64,000 bases of DNA from positions 989,783 through 1,053,782 of the forward strand of contig JAWQFM010000026.1 in assembly GCA_033442325.1 (NCBI GenBank), written 5' to 3'. Both the position numbers and the translations under genes were made by a program. Of the stretch, positions 55,989 to 63,853 are shown in pieces (positions within the stretch are counted from its first letter, which is position 1; each line of letters starts with the position of its first letter). The notes under the pieces are model-generated. The model was not told where the DNA came from and ran no database searches. It saw only the letters and a list, made by a program, of their open reading frames with translations. The stretch comes from Salpingoeca rosetta. Lineage: Eukaryota > Protista > Choanoflagellata.

Positions 55989-56024
<36 letters not shown>

Positions 56025-56216
56025 CACAGAGCAGTGGAACACAAGCGAGCGTCAAGGAAGGAAACCACAACTGGCGTGCGTGTAACAGAACAGTGGGTGA
56101 TGGACGAAATGTAACAACTGCACCACGGTGACAGGACTGGAGGAGAGAATAGAAGCCACAAAATGGACGGTGGTGAAAGAGAAGAAAGGGCGTGCCACGA
56201 GGCAAGTGGCCAAGAG

Positions 56217-57600
56217 CTAATACGCTGAGCTTGCGTCCACATAACACTTCATTGCCTCTCGCACCAGCTTGACTGCGTGGCCCACTCTCACACCCGCACC
56301 TTTCAACATTTGCATCGTGAGCAAATCCTCATGAACAGACACGACTAGCACCTCCAGGCAGTCGATGCCGTGCTCCACCAGGGCGGACTCGACGTGCGGC
56401 AGCAGCGAGTGGCGGTTGAGCCATTGAACGAGATCTGGCTCAAATGGCAATGAGGAGGACGAGGAGGAAGATGGGGTGGCGGGTGGCGGTGGAGCAGGAG
56501 TTGTCGCGGTGGTGGACGAGAGCGACAAGGAGGACTGCTGGATATGTGGGTGAAAGGGGTGGGTGAAACAGAGTGTGAACGCCAAGCTGCCAGGGATGCG
56601 CCTGCAGGCATGGACGCGCGCACACACACACACATACACATACACACACACACACAAAAATACCATACCTGCGTGGATCGACGTGCTGTGCCTGCTTCCT
56701 GCGTTGTTTGTTCGTCGCTTCTGGCAGAGACGGCAACCTGGCGCACCTTCTCTGCAATGTCGCGCAGCTGTGACGTGCGGTCCACAACAGCATTCAAAGC
56801 AACCACCGCGTCAATGTCAAACAGTGACAACACAGTCTCACGTACACTCTTGTGCTGCTGTGGCGGTGGCAAGTGTAGCACCTGCGTGAAATACTGGTCC
56901 AGCGCTACGGCTGTCTCCTTGCTTACAACATCTGGCAACGTCATCGCCAGCCGCTTCAGGCGGTCAAACGAGTCGTACTCGCTCACCTCGGCCCTGCTCA
57001 TGCTGCTGCTATCGTTCACATTGTGCCACGCGCTGCCAACAATCACGGGCACGACACGGCGAAGGCGGATCTTGGCGTGTTGCTGCTCCTCGTCTTCTTC
57101 GTGCGCCCGCTGGAACTCGTGCAGCGCCAGCATCGTCATCCACTCCAGCAGCACGTTGTCGCAGTAGTCGCTGTGCTGCAGCTGCCTCATCTGCATGATG
57201 GTGGCAGCAGACGCGATGGGGCACGCCACCAGACTCAGCCCAATCGCCGTCATGAACGACAACTTGAAGTTGAGGCCCGTCTCCAGGTTGTTGGCGTCCA
57301 GGAACGCCACCAGGTTGCGCTGCTCCAAGCGCGGATGCAGCGCCATCACCAGCCCACTGCTGGCGCGTTGCCTGTTGTGGTTGCGGGAGAGGGGGGGGGG
57401 GGGGGTTGAAAAAGGTCGTGATGAGATAACGGTAAACTGCATGCATTAGTTGTGGCGAGTTGGTGGAGGTGACAGACACGTACTGGCACAAACACACACA
57501 CACACACACACGCACACACGCACACGCACACACACGCACACGCACACGCTTGCACACGCTCACACGCACACACTTGCACACGCACACACGCACACACGCA

Positions 57601-57693
<93 letters not shown>

Positions 57694-60600
57694 CTCACCT
57701 GTAGCTGATGAAGACGTCGTACTTGTCCTGCAGGCCGAGTACGGGCAAGAGAGGGCCATACTTGGCGACAAGGTCATCGGGCGGCAGCAGCTGCTCGTCC
57801 ACCCACATGTCCTGCTTGCTCTTGTGGTGGTGCAGCACATCCTCGAAGAACAGCAGCGTCTTGTCGTCGTACGGCAACAACAGGCTGCTCTTCAGCTCGG
57901 GATAGCGCTCTCTGGCGGCCTCGCTAATCATCTTGTGCAGCATATGCAGCATGGCGCGTGGCTGCGCACTCGTGATCTTCATCTTGATGCCGCCAACAGC
58001 CGGCACAAGCTGCAACTCAAGCTTGGTCGACTCCATGAAGCAGATGGCGTGGGTGCGACTCAGCTTGGGCTGCTGCGATGCGCCGTGCTGTGCATGCGTC
58101 ATCACATGCGCTAACACCACCGTAAACAGGCCCTCTGGCAGGAAAGACGCATGCTGTGCGTCTTCAACACGCACGCTCGCCTCTGTCTTGAACTGCTTCA
58201 GGCGAAAGGTGACATACGCCGTCTTCTCCTCAAACCCAAGATATGGATTGACCTGCTGTGCTGCTGTCGTGCTCAGAGTGACAGATTCCATCGTGCTGCT
58301 GCTGTGGCGGATCGTCATCGGCAGGATGGCTGGGACCAGGTATTGCTGCTGCTGGTGCTGCTGGCGTTGGTGTGCGTCATTGCCCTTGCTCACACCATCG
58401 TTGTCACCGTGGCCGGAGTTGGTGCGGGCGAGCGCTCTGCGGCTGTCCACCAGCTTGGGTGATGCATACTCAATGCACAGCCCATATTGCATCATGAGGC
58501 GCAGGAACGGGTCAACCAAGTTGCTGTCCACGTCTCTCCACAACACCTCCAGCAGACGACGGTGCAGGATGCCGCGGTCGACAAGGTCGTCCCACACGCT
58601 GGCGCCAAGTGCCCGCACCTCCGGCCCCTGCACATCGTCGTCGTGCAGGCCAAACGTGCGGATAACGCGCGTCATCGTGTCCACCGCCCACTGCGGGCTC
58701 AGGATCACATAGGCCTCCATGCCTGGCACACTGTCGTAGTAGAGCACCATGGAGTACAAGTGCAGGAACTGGAGGCAGGCTCTCGTCTCCTCACGTGTGC
58801 GCAGCCCACAGGTGCGCGCAATCTGGACCACCTCGTCAAACGTGAGCAGCGGCCGTTTCTCGTCGCGGGCAATGGCGTTGAGCTTGTCGTAGAGGTGGAG
58901 GTAGGGTACAGCGACCTCCTGGCTCACGTACTCCTGCGCTAAGGCTGTGGAGGAGATGGTCTGGCGCAGGTCCTGGATCATGGGGTCGCCGATGGACTTG
59001 GTGTTGTCGACGGGCCAGAACCACAGCTTGTGCTTGCTGTTGTACACAACAGAAGCGAAGGCCGGGTTGTGGCGCAGGCGGCTGTGGATGTCACGCGAGA
59101 TCTGCTCATGTTGCTTCCGCTGACTGACCACATCAGCGAAGGTGCCGACGATGAGGACGGGCGCGCCTTTTGCATGGAGGTGGAGAGAAGACAACCAGTG
59201 CTCCATAAACTCCCACGCCTCTGTCCGCTTGCTCTCGTCTTGGTGCAGCAGGTCCTCCATCGAGAACACCAGCAGGTACACCGCGTACCTGTTGGGGGGA
59301 TGTTGGGAGTAAAAGGGTGGGGATGAGAAGGGTAAGGGTTTGGGGGGGGTAGCACTCACACACACGTAGCACNNNNNNNNNNNNNNNNNNNNNNNNNNNN
59401 NNNNNNNNNNNNNNNNNNNNNNNNNNNNNNNNNNNNNNNNNNNNNNNNNNNNNNNNNNNNNNNNNNNNNNNNACACACACACACATACACACACACACAC
59501 GCACGCACACACACACATACACAGCGACTCACTCTGTGAGGAAGAAAGGGTGGAAGATGTAGAAGGTGGACTGACCGCCCAGGTCAAAGATCTTGAAGGA
59601 GACCTGCATCTTGCCTTCGCCAATTGTCGCATCAAAGTCCATGTCCTTGATTGCCTTCTCCACCTCCTCCTTCGAAACGGATGGTGTGGTCACGGCAACG
59701 ACGTCAGCATTGTCGTCACCAACGTCGGCGTGGCTGGAAGCTGGGTGCTGCTCCTTTGCTGCAGGCGTTGCTTTGGAGGCATCACGACCTGCAGCAGGTG
59801 CAGGCACGGCTGCGGTGGACGCCTTGTCGGATGATGGAGCGGAAGTTGTGGTTGTGCGACGGTCCTTCTTGCACTGCTTCTTGTCATCCGTCCTGGCCTG
59901 CTTCTTGGCCTGCTTCTTGGCCTCCTCGTGCTGTTGCTCGGTAACACGGGTGGCGTGCTGCGCCCGTGCCTTTGCTGACGCGCGCTTCAGCTCCTCGTCC
60001 ACGCCGGCCTCGCGTGCCATCGCCGTGCCAACGAGACTGCGGATGAACTCGGACGTGCTCTGGTCGCTCTCCTGCACGAGATGTGGAAGGGTGGGTGTTT
60101 GTGAGTGTTGGTGAACAATGACATAAGGTGGTGATTGATCGAATGATGGTGGAAGCAGGTGTTGGTACAAGGTGGATGCACATATCACACACACACACAT
60201 ACACACACACACCGACAGACAACACACACGCACACACACCGACAGACGACACACACACACACACACACACAATCACGTGCACATACACGCAACTAAACGT
60301 ACCTTCCAGTCGCACACTTCCATGGTGTGGACGGTGACTCTCATGTCATCGGTGGTGCGCCGAGCGTGAAGTGCTGCTGCTTGTGAACGGCTTACCCCTG
60401 AGCGAGTTCACAAGCGTCGTCTTGCCNNNNNNNNNNNNNNNNNNNNNNNNNNNNNNNNNNNNNNNNNNNNNNNNNNNNNNNNNNNNNNNNNNNNNNNNNN
60501 NNNNNNNNNNNNNNNNNNNNNNNNNNNNNNNNNNNNNNNNNNNNNNNNNNNNNNNNNNNNNNNNNNNNNNNNNNNNNNNNNNNNNNNNNNNNNNNNNNNN

Positions 60601-63009
60601 NNNNNNNNNNNNNNNNNNTAAGGCGGATGCGGCAGTTGCCTTTTTACAAGGTGAAAAAAAGTCTGAAGTGGTACAGCAGTGCAAACGACAATGGGTTTCC
60701 TGTGCACGTACATGCTCTGTATCTGGTGTGTCTGAAGCTGTCATGTCCGCCTGCTGCTGCTCTTGCTTTGGTTGTTGCTGTTGTTGCTGTGGTTGTTGCT
60801 GGGGTTTGCTGTCTGGGTCGAGCCCTGGGATACTGGTGATGGCGTGGAAATTGCGTTTCTGCGCCACCATGAATGGTGTTCCACCCTGTGGATGTTGGAT
60901 GCGGACAGAGTGAGCGAGCACAGAAGCAGTGCACGTTGAAAAGAGGCGCGGTTGTGCAATAAAGGCGTCGCACCCACGGCACATGCGCGCGTACCCTGAT
61001 GTTCTTGACGGCAGTGTCTGCGCCCTTCTTCAGGAGCAGCTCCACGACGGCGGGCTGGTTGTGCCTGCAGGCAACGTGCAGCGGCGTGTCGCCCTGTGTT
61101 TGGGTGGGGGGGGCAGGAAGGGGCATGGCACGTGTGGTGAGGATCTGTTGAAAACGAACACACGGCCGGTGCAACCATGAGCGAGCGCCGTTCACATACA
61201 AGCACAACACACACATGATGAACATACCCGCTTGTCCTGTTGGTTGATGTCTGCATTGTCCTGCTCCATGAGGGAGGTGACAACGGAAGCGTCGCCATCC
61301 CTGCAGGCGGCAAACAGTTGCTCATGCTGCCGCTTCTTCTCCTCGCGTGCTTCGTTAAAGGCGGCCTTGCCCTCATCGTCGTACGCCCTGTGGTAACACG
61401 CGACATTGGACGCAAGCATCACGCAGCAAGTGTGCGTGAGGTGAAGGGTCGAGAGAAGGCAGGAAGCAAGCGACTAGAGTGGAAGCACGCGTTGACTGAC
61501 CAATCTGTGTCGAGTTTTCGGTCGACGGGCAGCGCGGCACCAAAGGCGCGGGCGGTGGCGGTGGAGTTCTTGTTGATCCTAAACGAGGACACGTGGTGGT
61601 AGCGTGTGGTTGGGAACAGGCAGCAAGTGCGGTGCGTGCGTCAGGAGGGTTGGTGGTTAGGGTTGTGGAGAAATGCAAGCAAGCAGAGAGGAACACACAC
61701 AGTGTGGCGTGCACTCAAAAGAGTGGCGATTGGTCACACAAATCCACAACAGGACACAGGCGTTCATGAGGCAGGCGCAACGCAATCGACGTACTCAAGC
61801 CGAGACAGCGTGCGGTTTTGGTCCAGTGCGGCACCCAGGGCCGCACCGCCAACCGGGGTGATGGAGTTGTTATACAAGCTGCAAGTGGCAAGAAATGCAT
61901 GTTGGAAGAGCAGGGGAACGGGTGGGCAAGCAACACGTGTCAGTGTCATGGATAAAAGTGGGTTGCAGATGGATCACGTGCACGCGTACTCGCTCGCACA
62001 TCAGGTCCTACGACTTTTAAGGCACAATGGCGGAAGCAAAGGGGGCAAATGCAAATTGCACAGGATGTGGCAGCACTTGTGGCACATATGAAGGATGGAA
62101 GCATTTGTTGGTCAAACAAGCAAGTCGCACAGACATCGTGGGTGGCTTGCGGTGCCTCCATCTGCACACGGGTATTGCGGAAGAAGCGCCTAAAGACACA
62201 CATTGCAAAGAGGAGCTTCCACTCACTCGAGTGCTGTGAGGGTCGTGTTGTGCTTCAGCATCTCCGCCAACGCCACAGCGCCCTCAGGACCGATGCGGTT
62301 GCCTCCCAGGCTGTCAAGATGGTATGATGCCACACAGGGCGATGATGCCACATGGATGAGGAAGAGTGAGTGAGTGCGTGATGATGCTCGCTGTGGGTGG
62401 CAACACAGTCGTTGAACCCCACCCCATCAACCACACATGTGCGCATGATAAGGTGGAACGGCAGTGACGCAGCATACATGTGCATGTGTGCGTGTACACA
62501 CTCACCTGAGTTCTTCGAGGGTCGTGTTGTGCTTCAGCATCTCCGCCAACGCCGCGCCCTCATCGCCGATGGAATTCCATCGCAGGCTGTGCAGACACAC
62601 AAGAAACGCAGGGAGCGAAGGTGAACACACGTCCAAACATGCGCCAGCAGGAGAGGAAAGGGGTGCAACATGCAACACCGCCATCCCAATCAACCATGCA
62701 TATCACACGATGCAGATTCATCATCACCACGCACCTGAGTGCTTTGAGGCAGGTGTTGTCCTTGAGCGCCTCGGCCACCGCACGCGCCCCAATGGCGCCG
62801 AGGCCAGCATTGAAGAAGCTGCAATTCCAAATGGTGTGTGTCATGAAATGAGCAAGAAGAATGAGGATCAAGAGAGCAAAAACGTGAGGGTGCCAGTCAC
62901 ACCCTGCCACAAACACACACAGTGTGTCCAGGCGGTGCGAGGGGACGCGCACACGTAAACACCCAACAGCAAGCCACACCAAGCTCATTGCAACACAAGG
63001 ACAAGCCAA

Positions 63010-63102
<93 letters not shown>

Positions 63103-63324
63103 CAGCACAAGCACAACCACAAGAAGTGGCCTTGGTGTCCAACACATGCATGCATGTTCCAACACGTCGTTTTGGTTGCTTTTCCACTCAGGCACTCACT
63201 GTATTCTATCCCCACACGTGTTGTTGGCGATGGCCCTGATCTTGTCCTTCACCCCATCCTTCAGCTTCGTCTGCGCCAGCAACGCCTCCACCTCCTCCCT
63301 CGCTCTCTTCTCTCCGCCGGACAT
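56217..63324 (-). CDS. Roco-family protein: LRR - ankyrin - Roc GTPase - COR - TIR - SAM
   Basis: RI-type LRRs ([26 protein letters not shown]; [24 protein letters not shown]). ANK ([26 protein letters not shown]). Roc ([36 protein letters not shown]). COR ([20 protein letters not shown]). TIR ([25 protein letters not shown]). SAM ([34 protein letters not shown]). Confidence 0.88.
59373..59472. other. Assembly gap
   Basis: N run. Confidence 1.
60427..60618. other. Assembly gap covering the start of the Roc P-loop exon
   Basis: N run directly upstream (minus strand) of GKTT. Confidence 1.
63013..63099. repeat. (GA)n microsatellite in Roco intron 1
   Basis: Direct reading. Confidence 0.9.
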
Positions 63325-63853
63325 GGCGACAGCGCGTCGTCTTTTCTCCTTGTGGCTTGTTGTGACGTGTTTGTGAGCGGCTGGCTGGAAGAAGACGACG
63401 ACAAAATGGACGACAACTCAACGCGCTGCTTTGTTTGTTTTCATTTGTTTTGTGTGTGTGTTGTTGTTTTGCGACTCAGCCATTGGACGATTCGCAAAAC
63501 CTTGCAGAGGTTATCCGCACAGCAGCGCTTCGGTGGAAGACCATCTCTTCGAGCCCTCGTTCCTGACGGAACACAACAAACAAACAGGATGAAGTGCCTC
63601 CAGCCAACCAGCAGCAACGCAACTCGCTTTGTCGCGCCGAAAGGAACAACAGCCGCTCCCTCCCAGCTTCTTTTGGTCTTGCCTGGTCGGTACAATACAC
63701 CAATGTCTGTAGCCACATCAACACCACAAACATCACCGCCGCTCCACCATCACCACCGTCAAGCGGGTCTCATCATCTTCATCGAGCCATTTACTGAGGA
63801 AAGAACAGGTCCGCCACACAATCCAAAACAACGCTCCCCAGTCCAACACACAT

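What the first reader, a model, noticed from the sequence alone, without database searches (positions are those of the whole stretch)
56217..63324. LRR-ANK-Roc-COR-TIR-SAM protein: candidate NLR-like, GTPase-switched immune/cell-death receptor in a unicellular holozoan
Seen: one spliced gene carries RI-type LRRs, ankyrin repeats, a Roc GTPase, COR, a TIR domain (YDVFISYR...FLD...CDNVLLEW) and a C-terminal SAM domain, with no kinase. Known: Roc-COR is the dimerising switch of LRRK2/DAPK. TIR domains with a conserved alphaC Glu are NADases (SARM1, plant TNLs, bacterial Thoeris). In SARM1, SAM-driven oligomerisation is required for TIR activity. Inference: this is a sensor-switch-effector layout like an NLR, with Roc-COR in place of NACHT/NB-ARC. 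The Glu in DNVLLEW appears to sit at the catalytic position. The protein could be a ligand-activated NADase for anti-pathogen signalling or death, and may belong to an expanded family.
Basis: partly seen in the sequence, partly recalled or inferred. Interest (0 to 1): 0.85.

Follow-up and report, generated by a model that had tools for sequence, protein, structure and literature searches.

The report
Choanoflagellate Roco GTPase with catalytic TIR
This is a real, expressed gene of the choanoflagellate Salpingoeca rosetta. It joins a Roc-COR GTPase switch to a SARM1-like TIR enzyme domain and a SAM domain, and it is one of about 40 near-copies; a sister copy's TIR was recently shown to make the signalling molecule cADPR.

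Summary
The stretch is the minus-strand, 14-exon gene PTSG_08722 of Salpingoeca rosetta. It encodes five RI-type LRRs, ankyrin repeats, Roc, COR, TIR and a C-terminal SAM fold, with no kinase. Stranded RNA-seq shows it expressed and spliced largely as modelled.

- **Gaps:** Gap 59373-59472 lies in an intron. Gap 60427-60618 hides intron sequence plus about 105 nt of exon 10, including the P-loop, which RNA reads supply. The nearby frameshift is an assembly error.
- **TIR:** The family TIR profile hits human SARM1 TIR best (E 1e-10). Glu1162 aligns with SARM1 E642 and is at least 90% conserved in 45 relatives. AlphaFold2 gives a confident TIR fold.
- **Already tested on a paralogue:** A 2026 preprint shows the TIR of PTSG_12359 (65% identical) makes cADPR, dependent on that Glu, with no NAD+ depletion recorded.
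- **Family:** The genome holds about 41 Roc-COR loci of this family. Thirty-six are followed by a TIR exon, and 23 of those also by SAM. Relatives occur in other choanoflagellates and in cryptophytes. The scan noted paralogues elsewhere in this genome.
- **Still inference:** NLR-like immune sensing, GTP control and SAM-driven assembly. The LRRs are short and not hypervariable.

It is a new member of a known kind.

The parts
63200..63324 (-). Exon 1: start codon (63322-63324) and N-terminal 42 residues
   Evidence: ORF and GTGAGT donor. Identical to P0154.
61501..62818 (-). Exons 2-6 (62735-62818, 62506-62586, 62227-62310, 61795-61878, 61501-61578): five RI-type LRRs, one per exon, all bounded by phase-2 introns
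   Evidence: Pfam LRR_6 2.6e-17. Intron phases. RNA joints confirm E5-E6 and E6-E7, and loose ends confirm E4-E5.
60712..61387 (-). Exons 7-9 (61228-61387, 60995-61093, 60712-60885): ankyrin repeats and a Q-rich linker
   Evidence: Pfam Ank 3.9e-10 on exon 8. Ank_2 6e-12 on P0154. RNA joints confirm E7-E8 and E8-E9.
60427..60618 (.). Assembly gap 2: hides the 3' end of intron 9 and about 105 nt of exon 10 (start of Roc and first half of the P-loop)
   Evidence: RNA loose ends at 60710 and 60426, translated. The equivalent interval in the C4 paralogue is exactly 192 nt.
60303..60426 (-). Exon 10, visible part: P-loop end (GKT) and switch I. The assembly lacks two bases (after 60356 and after 60383) and has A for G at 60369.
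   Evidence: read laying tables 3 and 4. The corrected frame is open. The reads are not from the C4 paralogue. RNA joint 60302/60071 confirms the junction with exon 11.
59533..60071 (-). Exon 11: a charged insertion of about 150 aa inside Roc, then the G3 motif DLGGQ (59571-59585)
   Evidence: Pfam Roc partial match. Motif located. The insertion is hypervariable among paralogues.
59373..59472 (.). Assembly gap 1, inside intron 11 (59289-59532), flanked by (CA)n
   Evidence: The GT donor at 59532/59531 and the AG acceptor at 59290/59289 lie outside the gap. The frame continues as FFLTE|YAVYLL. The Roc Pfam match 528-606 of P0154 is continuous across the junction.
57699..59288 (-). Exon 12: Roc C-terminal half (G4-like VGTFAD, 59132-59149), COR-A, COR-B, and the first TIR strand KYDVFISYR (57698-57724)
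   Evidence: COR-A 2e-18, COR-B 0.012. RNA depth is 30-190x from the minus strand.
56669..57371 (-). Exon 13: TIR core and linker. Includes [10 protein letters not shown] (BB-loop region, 57275-57307) and the catalytic-position Glu1162 codon at 57143-57145.
   Evidence: Family profile against PDB: SARM1 TIR 1.3e-10, with Glu aligned to E642. AF2 pLDDT 89.5. The Foldseek top 35 hits are all TIR domains.
56217..56537 (-). Exon 14: S/P-rich linker, SAM fold (about 56220-56450), and stop codon 56217-56219
   Evidence: Pfam SAM_2 19.2 bits. AF2 gives five helices at pLDDT 82.6. VIA-align Z 6-8.3, with almost only SAM domains at the top. RNA loose ends join 56537 to 56669.

Best explanation
PTSG_08722 is an intact, transcribed member of a large choanoflagellate subfamily of Roco GTPases. 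Its layout is five RI-type LRRs, ankyrin repeats, Roc, COR, a catalytic-type TIR and one C-terminal SAM domain.

Shown:
- The architecture, the expression and the splicing of most junctions.
- An intact set of GTPase motifs (GQGRAGKT, DLGGQ, VGTFAD).
- A TIR fold whose nearest solved relative by sequence profile is SARM1.
- A conserved Glu1162 at the SARM1 E642 position.
- A SAM fold.
- About 40 paralogous loci.

Shown for a paralogue only (literature): the TIR converts NAD+ to cADPR, and this needs that Glu.

Inferred mechanism: the Roc-COR module acts as a nucleotide-dependent conformational or dimerisation switch, as in other Roco proteins. In the active state, TIR domains are brought together, helped by SAM self-association, to form the composite active site. 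The enzyme then makes cADPR (and perhaps ADPR) as a second messenger for a danger or stress response, rather than simply draining NAD+. The LRR-ankyrin part is the likely regulatory or input module.
For: - **Gene model:** built and identical to the annotated protein.
- **Expression:** stranded RNA comes from the minus strand at 20-190x, and intron 12 has zero depth. Joints or loose ends support 8 of the 13 junctions.
- **GTPase:** the P-loop is recovered from RNA reads.
- **Pfam:** Roc, COR-A, LRR_6 and Ank all score above their cut-offs.
- **TIR by profile:** the profile of 45 relatives hits SARM1 TIR at 1.3e-10, with FISYR, FxD, LExG and D..V..E aligned. Glu is at least 90% conserved.
- **TIR by fold:** the AF2 model has pLDDT 89.5, and its Foldseek hits are all TIR domains at probability 1.00.
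- **SAM by fold:**. SAM_2 and SAM_1 score above their cut-offs in the homologues P0174, P0151 and P0086.
- **Paralogue experiment:** the TIR of P0173 (F2UB80), 65% identical to ours, is active and makes cADPR. Its catalytic residue 1118 is the Glu of DNVLLEW.
- **Family arrangement:** 41 Roc-COR loci, 36 with a TIR exon downstream and 23 of those also with SAM.
- **Single-ORF relatives:** Roc-COR-TIR(-SAM) sits in one ORF in transcriptomes of other choanoflagellates.
Against: - No activity data exist for this protein itself.
- The own TIR and SAM score below Pfam's gathering thresholds (23.9 against 28, and 14-19 against 20.5).
- The RNA joints E11-E12 and E12-E13 were not listed, because the tool skipped the (CA)n introns. 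Continuity there rests on the reading frame, the depth, the annotation and homologues.
- Nothing here shows GTP control of the TIR, SAM oligomerisation, a ligand or an immune role.
- The LRR block is short and not hypervariable.
- Reads from 90-99% identical paralogues are mixed into the RNA data.
Confidence: 0.6

Rival explanations
1. It is a SARM1-style executioner. On activation the TIR drains NAD+ and kills the cell (abortive defence or programmed death), and cADPR is only a by-product.
For: SARM1 TIR is the best solved match by sequence profile, and the catalytic Glu is aligned. A SAM domain is present. SARM1 also makes cADPR.
Against: For the tested paralogue, the preprint's Table S4 lists cADPR production but no NAD+ depletion. 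The text says most of the tested TIRs did not deplete NAD+ even after overnight expression. The domain order and the single SAM differ from SARM1.
Confidence: 0.15
2. It is a housekeeping or developmental signalling enzyme, not an immune one. Roco-controlled cADPR/ADPR production would tune Ca2+ signalling, motility, feeding or life-stage switches.
For: It is constitutively expressed at moderate depth in ordinary cultures. The LRR-ANK module is short and fairly conserved among paralogues. Many Roco proteins act in cytoskeleton or trafficking roles (established knowledge). S. rosetta has an ADPR-gated TRPM2 channel (PMC6461439).
Against: About 40 dispersed and partly clustered paralogues with mosaic identity fit conflict-type gene families better than housekeeping genes. 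In this family, TIR can be accompanied or replaced by PARP or PNP_UDP domains, which are typical of defence systems.
Confidence: 0.15
3. The TIR is a non-enzymatic scaffold that recruits other TIR proteins, as in animal TLR adaptors.
For: Choanoflagellates have TLR-like and other TIR proteins (PMC6040629).
Against: The catalytic Glu and the surrounding motifs are conserved. The paralogue is enzymatically active.
Confidence: 0.05
4. The locus is a broken copy or a mis-assembly. The frameshift and gaps are real lesions, and the RNA comes from paralogues.
For: The assembly as written has a frameshift at 60356-60385 and lacks the P-loop. The C4 paralogue is 94-99% identical.
Against: No read carries the assembly's A at 60369. 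The reads that cross into gap 2 carry two letters that differ from the C4 copy. All other exons are open. Window-specific letters make up roughly 45-85% of reads at those paralogue-discriminating sites in exon 11 that the read table lists.
Confidence: 0.03

Closest known systems
S. rosetta PTSG_12359 (UniProt F2UB80), TIR no. 33 in bioRxiv 10.64898/2026.04.20.719644
   Same: It is a paralogue in the same genome. It carries LRR, ankyrin, Roc, COR-A and TIR by precomputed Pfam, and has a stretch matching our SAM. Its TIR is 65% identical to ours, with the same DNVLLEW Glu. That TIR makes cADPR in E. coli, and activity is lost when the Glu is mutated.
   Different: It is a different locus (1352 aa against about 1461 aa). 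Only the isolated TIR was tested. The preprint does not treat the family's size, the SAM domain, the GTPase or this gene.
SARM1 (human; TIR-1 in C. elegans)
   Same: It is the best solved match to the family TIR profile (E 1.3e-10). FISYR, FxD, LExG and the catalytic Glu (E642) align. A SAM fold is present. It is a cytosolic multidomain protein with a regulatory repeat domain.
   Different: SARM1 is ARM-SAM-SAM-TIR, with tandem SAMs before the TIR forming an octamer. It has no GTPase and is gated by NMN/NAD+ through the ARM domain. Here the order is LRR-ANK-Roc-COR-TIR-SAM, with one SAM after the TIR. The two are not orthologues.
Plant TIR-NLRs (Roq1, RPP1, RUN1, L6)
   Same: Their TIR domains are the best Foldseek matches to the model. 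The logic is the same: repeat domain, nucleotide switch and catalytic TIR. They also form a large paralogous family.
   Different: In plants the switch is an NB-ARC STAND ATPase, the TIR is N-terminal and the LRRs are long, C-terminal and hypervariable. Here the switch is a Ras-like Roc with COR, the TIR is C-terminal and there are five short N-terminal LRRs.
Kinase-less Roco proteins (MFHAS1/MASL1, Chlorobium tepidum Roco, brown-algal LRR-ROCO; PMC11378527)
   Same: They share the LRR-Roc-COR core without a kinase. Brown-algal ROCOs also have one LRR per exon with phase-2 introns, and have been proposed as immune receptors.
   Different: Those proteins lack a TIR or SAM output. Here there is also an ankyrin block between LRR and Roc, and an insertion of about 150 aa inside Roc.
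Other reported ROCO-TIR fusions (Aplysia TLR/MyD88-like proteins, PMC9334734; Chondrus TPR-ROCO-TIR, PMC11378527)
   Same: Roc-COR and TIR sit in one polypeptide.
   Different: The accessory domains and orders differ. They are known only from in-silico surveys. Their relation to this family was not tested here.

Membership tests
Roco (Roc-COR) GTPases | Ras-like Roc domain with G1, G3 and G4 motifs | tested here: met
   Pfam Roc scores 35 bits against a cut-off of 27. GQGRAGKT comes from RNA reads. DLGGQ and VGTFAD were located.
Roco (Roc-COR) GTPases | COR domain directly C-terminal of Roc | tested here: met
   COR-A scores 64 bits against a cut-off of 35.3. COR-B is weak at 14-16 bits, below its cut-off of 27.
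Roco (Roc-COR) GTPases | GTP binding or hydrolysis, and COR-mediated dimerisation | not testable with these tools
   Needs purified protein.
Catalytic (NADase/cyclase) TIR domains | TIR fold | tested here: met
   AF2 pLDDT 89.5 and pTM 0.89. The Foldseek top 35 hits are all TIR domains, at probability 0.97-1.00. The family profile hits SARM1 TIR at 1.3e-10.
Catalytic (NADase/cyclase) TIR domains | Pfam TIR/TIR_2 gathering score | tested here: not met
   The own protein scores 23.9 bits against 28. The relatives P0163 (35.0) and P0086 (29.8) pass.
Catalytic (NADase/cyclase) TIR domains | Glu at the catalytic position (SARM1 E642) | tested here: met
   The HMM alignment places the family LLEW Glu on the SARM1 HKE Glu. 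E93 of the alignment, which is E1162, is present in at least 90% of 45 sequences. The preprint independently assigns the same Glu in the paralogue.
Catalytic (NADase/cyclase) TIR domains | NAD+ cleavage or cADPR formation by this protein | not testable with these tools
   Shown only for the paralogue PTSG_12359, in the literature.
SARM1 orthologues | ARM-SAM-SAM-TIR architecture | tested here: not met
   There is no ARM, a single SAM after the TIR, and Roc-COR is present.
NLR / STAND receptors | NACHT or NB-ARC STAND ATPase core | tested here: not met
   No such Pfam match at E up to 0.1. The likeness is in layout only.
SAM domains | Five-helix SAM fold | tested here: met
   AF2 gives five helices at pLDDT 82.6. 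In the exhaustive VIA-align search, 30 of the top 32 rows are SAM domains, at Z 6.1-8.3 and rmsd about 2 A over 61-67 residues. SARM1 SAM is among them.
SAM domains | Pfam SAM_1/SAM_2 gathering score | tested here: not met
   The own protein scores 19.2 bits on the exon alone and 14.1 in the whole protein, against 20.5. The homologues P0174 (29.6), P0151 (30.4) and P0086 (39.0) pass. The SAM profile found nothing in the PDB.
SAM domains | Homo-oligomerisation | not testable with these tools
   Needs SEC-MALS or EM.
LRRK-type Roco kinases | Protein kinase domain after COR | tested here: not met
   No kinase match. The UniRef name 'non-specific serine/threonine protein kinase' given to paralogues is unfounded.

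The most novel reading that the evidence does not exclude
The roughly 40 LRR-ANK-Roc-COR-TIR-SAM genes are the choanoflagellate counterpart of NLR repertoires. On this reading they are Ras-like-GTPase-switched cytosolic receptors whose activated TIR-SAM assemblies make cADPR/ADPR as an alarm signal. That signal may be read by the ADPR-gated TRPM2 channel-enzyme of S. rosetta. This would be an innate-immune signalling route built on a Roco switch instead of a STAND ATPase, and it would predate animals.
Probability: 0.2. Interest if true: 0.8.

Novelty: new member of a known kind. Interest (0 to 1): 0.5.

Why it matters
S. rosetta is a genetically tractable close relative of animals. It lacks NLRs in published surveys (PMC6040629), yet it carries dozens of Roco-TIR-SAM genes whose TIR type is now known to be catalytic.

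The family offers a direct way to test whether a Ras-like Roc-COR switch can gate a TIR enzyme. It also lets one ask how TIR-derived nucleotides signal in a pre-animal lineage.

For this particular gene the result is more modest. The study corrects the public gene model, which lacks the P-loop because of an assembly gap. It also shows that the locus is intact and expressed.

Tried and rejected
- **phmmer of the TIR exon alone against the PDB:** no hit. The family profile was needed.
- **SAM profile against PDB sequences:** only chance-level rows. Foldseek on the SAM model gave no E at or below 0.001, although SAM domains headed the list. The exhaustive structural search was more informative.
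- **Complex prediction on two copies of the SAM region (P0154 1345-1426):** no verdict, score 0.00. This is evidence neither for nor against self-association.
- **My first guess about gap 2:** I read the letters just before gap 2 (..ATAASAL) as coding. RNA reads refute this, because the exon 9 donor joins directly to sequence hidden in the gap.
- **Cross-mapping from the C4 paralogue as the source of the frameshift 'repairs':** rejected, because the reads differ from C4 at two synonymous sites in the gap-proximal part.
- **Read laying limits:** the tool skipped the (CA)n-rich introns, so the joints E11-E12 and E12-E13 were not listed.
- **Literature searches:** searches for the locus tags, and for ROCO together with choanoflagellates, found no description of the family. 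The H3K27me3 paper and the neuroimmunology review held nothing relevant.
Full report
**1. What is in the sequence**

Six-frame translation of 56000-63500 shows all long coding stretches on the minus strand. Using GT..AG sites and frame continuity, I built a 14-exon model running from the ATG at 63324 to the stop at 56217-56219.

The organism is Salpingoeca rosetta ATCC 50818, identified from the names of related proteins. The genome is 55.4 Mb. The annotated protein PTSG_08722 (P0154, 1426 aa) is identical to my model everywhere except a stretch of about 45 residues next to gap 2. There the public model reads intron sequence and lacks the P-loop.

**2. The gaps, tested first**

Gap 1 (59373-59472) sits in intron 11 between (CA)n tracts. 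The donor (59532/59531) and the acceptor (59290/59289) both lie outside the gap. The frame continues as FFLTE|YAVYLL, and the Pfam Roc match of P0154 (residues 528-606) runs without a break across this junction.

Gap 2 (60427-60618) is different, because it hides coding sequence.
- Raw stranded RNA reads run from the exon 9 donor into letters that translate as VHREAVQARM.
- Reads run from 60426 into letters that translate as KMGVSGQGRA, followed by GKTTLV. Together these form an intact P-loop, GQGRAGKT.
- In the close paralogue on contig C4, the interval between the same two flanking words is exactly 192 nt, made of 87 nt of intron and 105 nt of exon. This matches the gap's stated length.

Just beside the gap, the assembly shows a frameshift.
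- All reads have G instead of A at 60369: 13 of 13 in one raw run and 61 of 61 in the other.
- Most reads, and every contig, have one added base after 60356 and one after 60383.
- With these three changes, exon 10 is one open frame with a normal switch I.

These are exactly the three differences between our locus and the C4 copy, so I checked for cross-mapping. The same reads carry GGCGTCTCT where C4 has GGAGTATCT, so they do not come from C4. I conclude that the frameshift is an assembly error at a gap edge.

**3. Expression and splicing**

In two stranded RNA-seq runs, more than 95% of pairs have the first mate on the plus strand, as expected for a minus-strand gene. Exon depth is 20-190x, and depth inside intron 12 is zero.
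- Joints with CT..AC ends confirm E5-E6, E6-E7, E7-E8, E8-E9 and E10-E11.
- Loose ends confirm E4-E5, E9-E10 and E13-E14 (56537 joined to 56669).
- The joints E11-E12 and E12-E13 were not listed, because the tool skips the repeat-rich introns.

For E12-E13 the evidence is therefore indirect:
- The first TIR strand (KYDVFISYR) is encoded at the end of the COR exon and needs exon 13 to complete the domain.
- The spliced sequence folds as one confident TIR with that strand in the sheet.
- The annotation joins the two exons.
- Transcriptome-derived ORFs of other choanoflagellates carry Roc-COR-TIR(-SAM) in one frame.

**4. Domains**

Pfam on P0154 gave:

| Domain | Result | Cut-off |
|---|---|---|
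| LRR_6 | 2.6e-17 | passes |
| Ank | 1.4e-11 | passes |
| Roc | 35 bits | 27 |
| COR-A | 64 bits | 35.3 |
| COR-B | weak (14.2 bits) | 27 |
| TIR_2 | 23.9 bits | 28 |
| SAM_2 | 14.1 bits | 20.5 |
| Kinase | no match | - |

Because TIR and SAM fall below their cut-offs, I tested them further.

TIR:
- An alignment of 45 TIR regions from the family (A1) has invariant S15, R17, F40 and W94. Y10, Y16, D42, G49, D88 and E93 are nearly invariant.
- As a profile, its best hits among solved structures are human SARM1 TIR (1.3e-10). Plant TIRs (Roq1, L6, AtTIR), C. elegans TIR-1 and bacterial TIRs follow.
- The printed alignment places FISYR on FISYR, FLD on FID, LETG on LEAG, and the Glu of LLEW on the Glu of SARM1's VHKE, which is E642.
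- AlphaFold2 gives pLDDT 89.5 and pTM 0.89, with the Glu near the start of the helix that follows strand C.
- The Foldseek top 35 hits are all TIR domains.

SAM:
- AF2 gives five helices at pLDDT 82.6.
- An exhaustive structural search lists almost only SAM domains at the top. These include Caskin2, p73, Eph receptors, tankyrase and SARM1, at Z 6-8.3 and rmsd about 2 A.
- The homologues P0174, P0151 and P0086 pass Pfam's SAM cut-offs.

**5. The family**

Searching the genome with the Roc-COR exon, the TIR exon and the SAM exon gives the following:
- 41 Roc-COR loci, at 46-100% identity counting our own.
- 36 of these are followed by a homologous TIR exon on the same strand within 2.5 kb.
- 23 of those 36 are also followed by a SAM exon.

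At least 26 annotated S. rosetta proteins of 950 aa or more share the TIR.

Identity between paralogues is mosaic. The C4 copy is 99-100% identical in TIR and SAM but 85% in the LRRs. In another group, the LRRs (about 82%) are more conserved than COR and TIR (about 67%). This points to gene conversion or exon exchange. It does not show a hypervariable LRR sensor.

Outside S. rosetta, Roc-COR followed by this TIR type occurs in several groups:
- the choanoflagellates Salpingoeca infusionum, Mylnosiga fluctuans, Barroeca monosierra and Hartaetosiga balthica;
- the cryptophytes Guillardia theta and Hanusia phi;
- many environmental contigs.

**6. What is already known**

A preprint of April 2026 (10.64898/2026.04.20.719644) expressed eukaryotic TIR domains in E. 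coli. Its Table S4 entry 33 is residues 1034-1255 of S. rosetta F2UB80 (1352 aa). It is recorded as active and as producing cADPR, with catalytic residue 1118, and no entry for NAD+ depletion is visible.

That protein is P0173 (PTSG_12359), a paralogue. Residue 1118 is the Glu of DNVLLEW, and its TIR is 65% identical to ours. The text says activity was lost on mutating the Glu in all cases. The figure legend lists Roc, COR and LRR among the drawn domains.

Other relevant literature:
- ROCO-TIR fusions were noted in silico in Aplysia (PMC9334734) and Chondrus (PMC11378527).
- LRR-ROCOs with one LRR per phase-2 exon were proposed as immune receptors in brown algae.
- The 2018 choanoflagellate survey lists Ank, Arm and SH2 as TIR partners, but not Roc-COR. 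This is probably because these TIRs score just under Pfam's threshold.
- I found no paper that describes the S. rosetta family as such.

**7. Mechanism**

Shown: the architecture, expression, GTPase motifs, TIR and SAM folds, the Glu and the family size.

Shown for a paralogue: Glu-dependent cADPR synthesis.

Inferred from established knowledge of Roco proteins, where Roc-COR acts as a nucleotide-dependent dimer/monomer switch, and of TIR enzymes, whose active site forms only on self-association:
- The GTPase state, set through the LRR-ankyrin input, controls TIR assembly.
- The SAM domain adds avidity.
- The output is a nucleotide second messenger.

Whether the trigger is a pathogen is unknown. 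S. rosetta has an ADPR-gated TRPM2 channel-enzyme (PMC6461439, PMC11479946). It is a possible reader of the signal, but this is speculation.

**8. Verdict**

The TIR is very probably catalytic, and the family is expanded. The NLR analogy, ligand activation, SAM-driven assembly and the immune or death role are untested, and the product points to signalling rather than NAD+ destruction.

It is a new member of a known kind. The family-level picture of about 40 kinase-less Roco-TIR-SAM genes in a model choanoflagellate is the part that deserves follow-up.

Noticed in passing
window 61501-62818 (-): Each of the five LRRs is one exon of 78-84 nt, and all flanking introns are in phase 2. The exons can therefore be duplicated, skipped or swapped without breaking the frame. 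Brown-algal LRR-ROCO genes show the same arrangement (PMC11378527).
   Followed up: partly
window 62135-62227 (-): RNA reads show a minor alternative donor 92 nt downstream of the exon 4 donor (joint 61878/62135). It has 16 raw reads, against 51 loose-end reads for the main junction in one of the runs. The 92-nt extension is not a multiple of three, so it would shift the frame.
   Followed up: no
window 59590-60071 (-): An insertion of about 150 aa, charged and low in complexity, sits inside the Roc domain between switch I and the DLGGQ motif. In most paralogues it is only 28-38% identical while the flanks are 77-96% identical. Its role is unknown.
   Followed up: partly
L013 (G000:C4:30000-39999) against window 56000-63600: The C4 paralogue (PTSG_13152) is 99-100% identical in TIR, linker and SAM, but 85% in the LRRs and 76% at the N-terminus. 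This mosaic pattern suggests recent gene conversion between dispersed copies.
   Followed up: partly
P0154 residues about 325-370; window 60427-60720: The public model PTSG_08722 translates intron 9 and skips the hidden part of exon 10, so the deposited protein lacks the P-loop. UniRef names several paralogues 'non-specific serine/threonine protein kinase' although none has a kinase domain.
   Followed up: yes
P0175 (PTSG_12997) and P0002 (PTSG_02681), other contigs of G000: Family variants carry other nucleotide-directed domains. P0175 has a PARP catalytic domain after a second Roc-COR; this model may be two fused genes. P0002 has a PNP_UDP_1 phosphorylase domain downstream of a degenerate TIR. 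Two loci appear to have Roc-COR followed by SAM without a TIR.
   Followed up: partly
G000 C30:18444-81491; C4:36208-77173: Some family members lie in loose clusters: three within about 63 kb on C30, and two within about 41 kb on C4. Most of the others are dispersed over some 30 contigs.
   Followed up: no
window 63007-63100, 57480-57700, 60180-60290: Long (GA)n and (CA)n microsatellites fill several introns of the gene. They flank both assembly gaps and are the likely reason for them.
   Followed up: no
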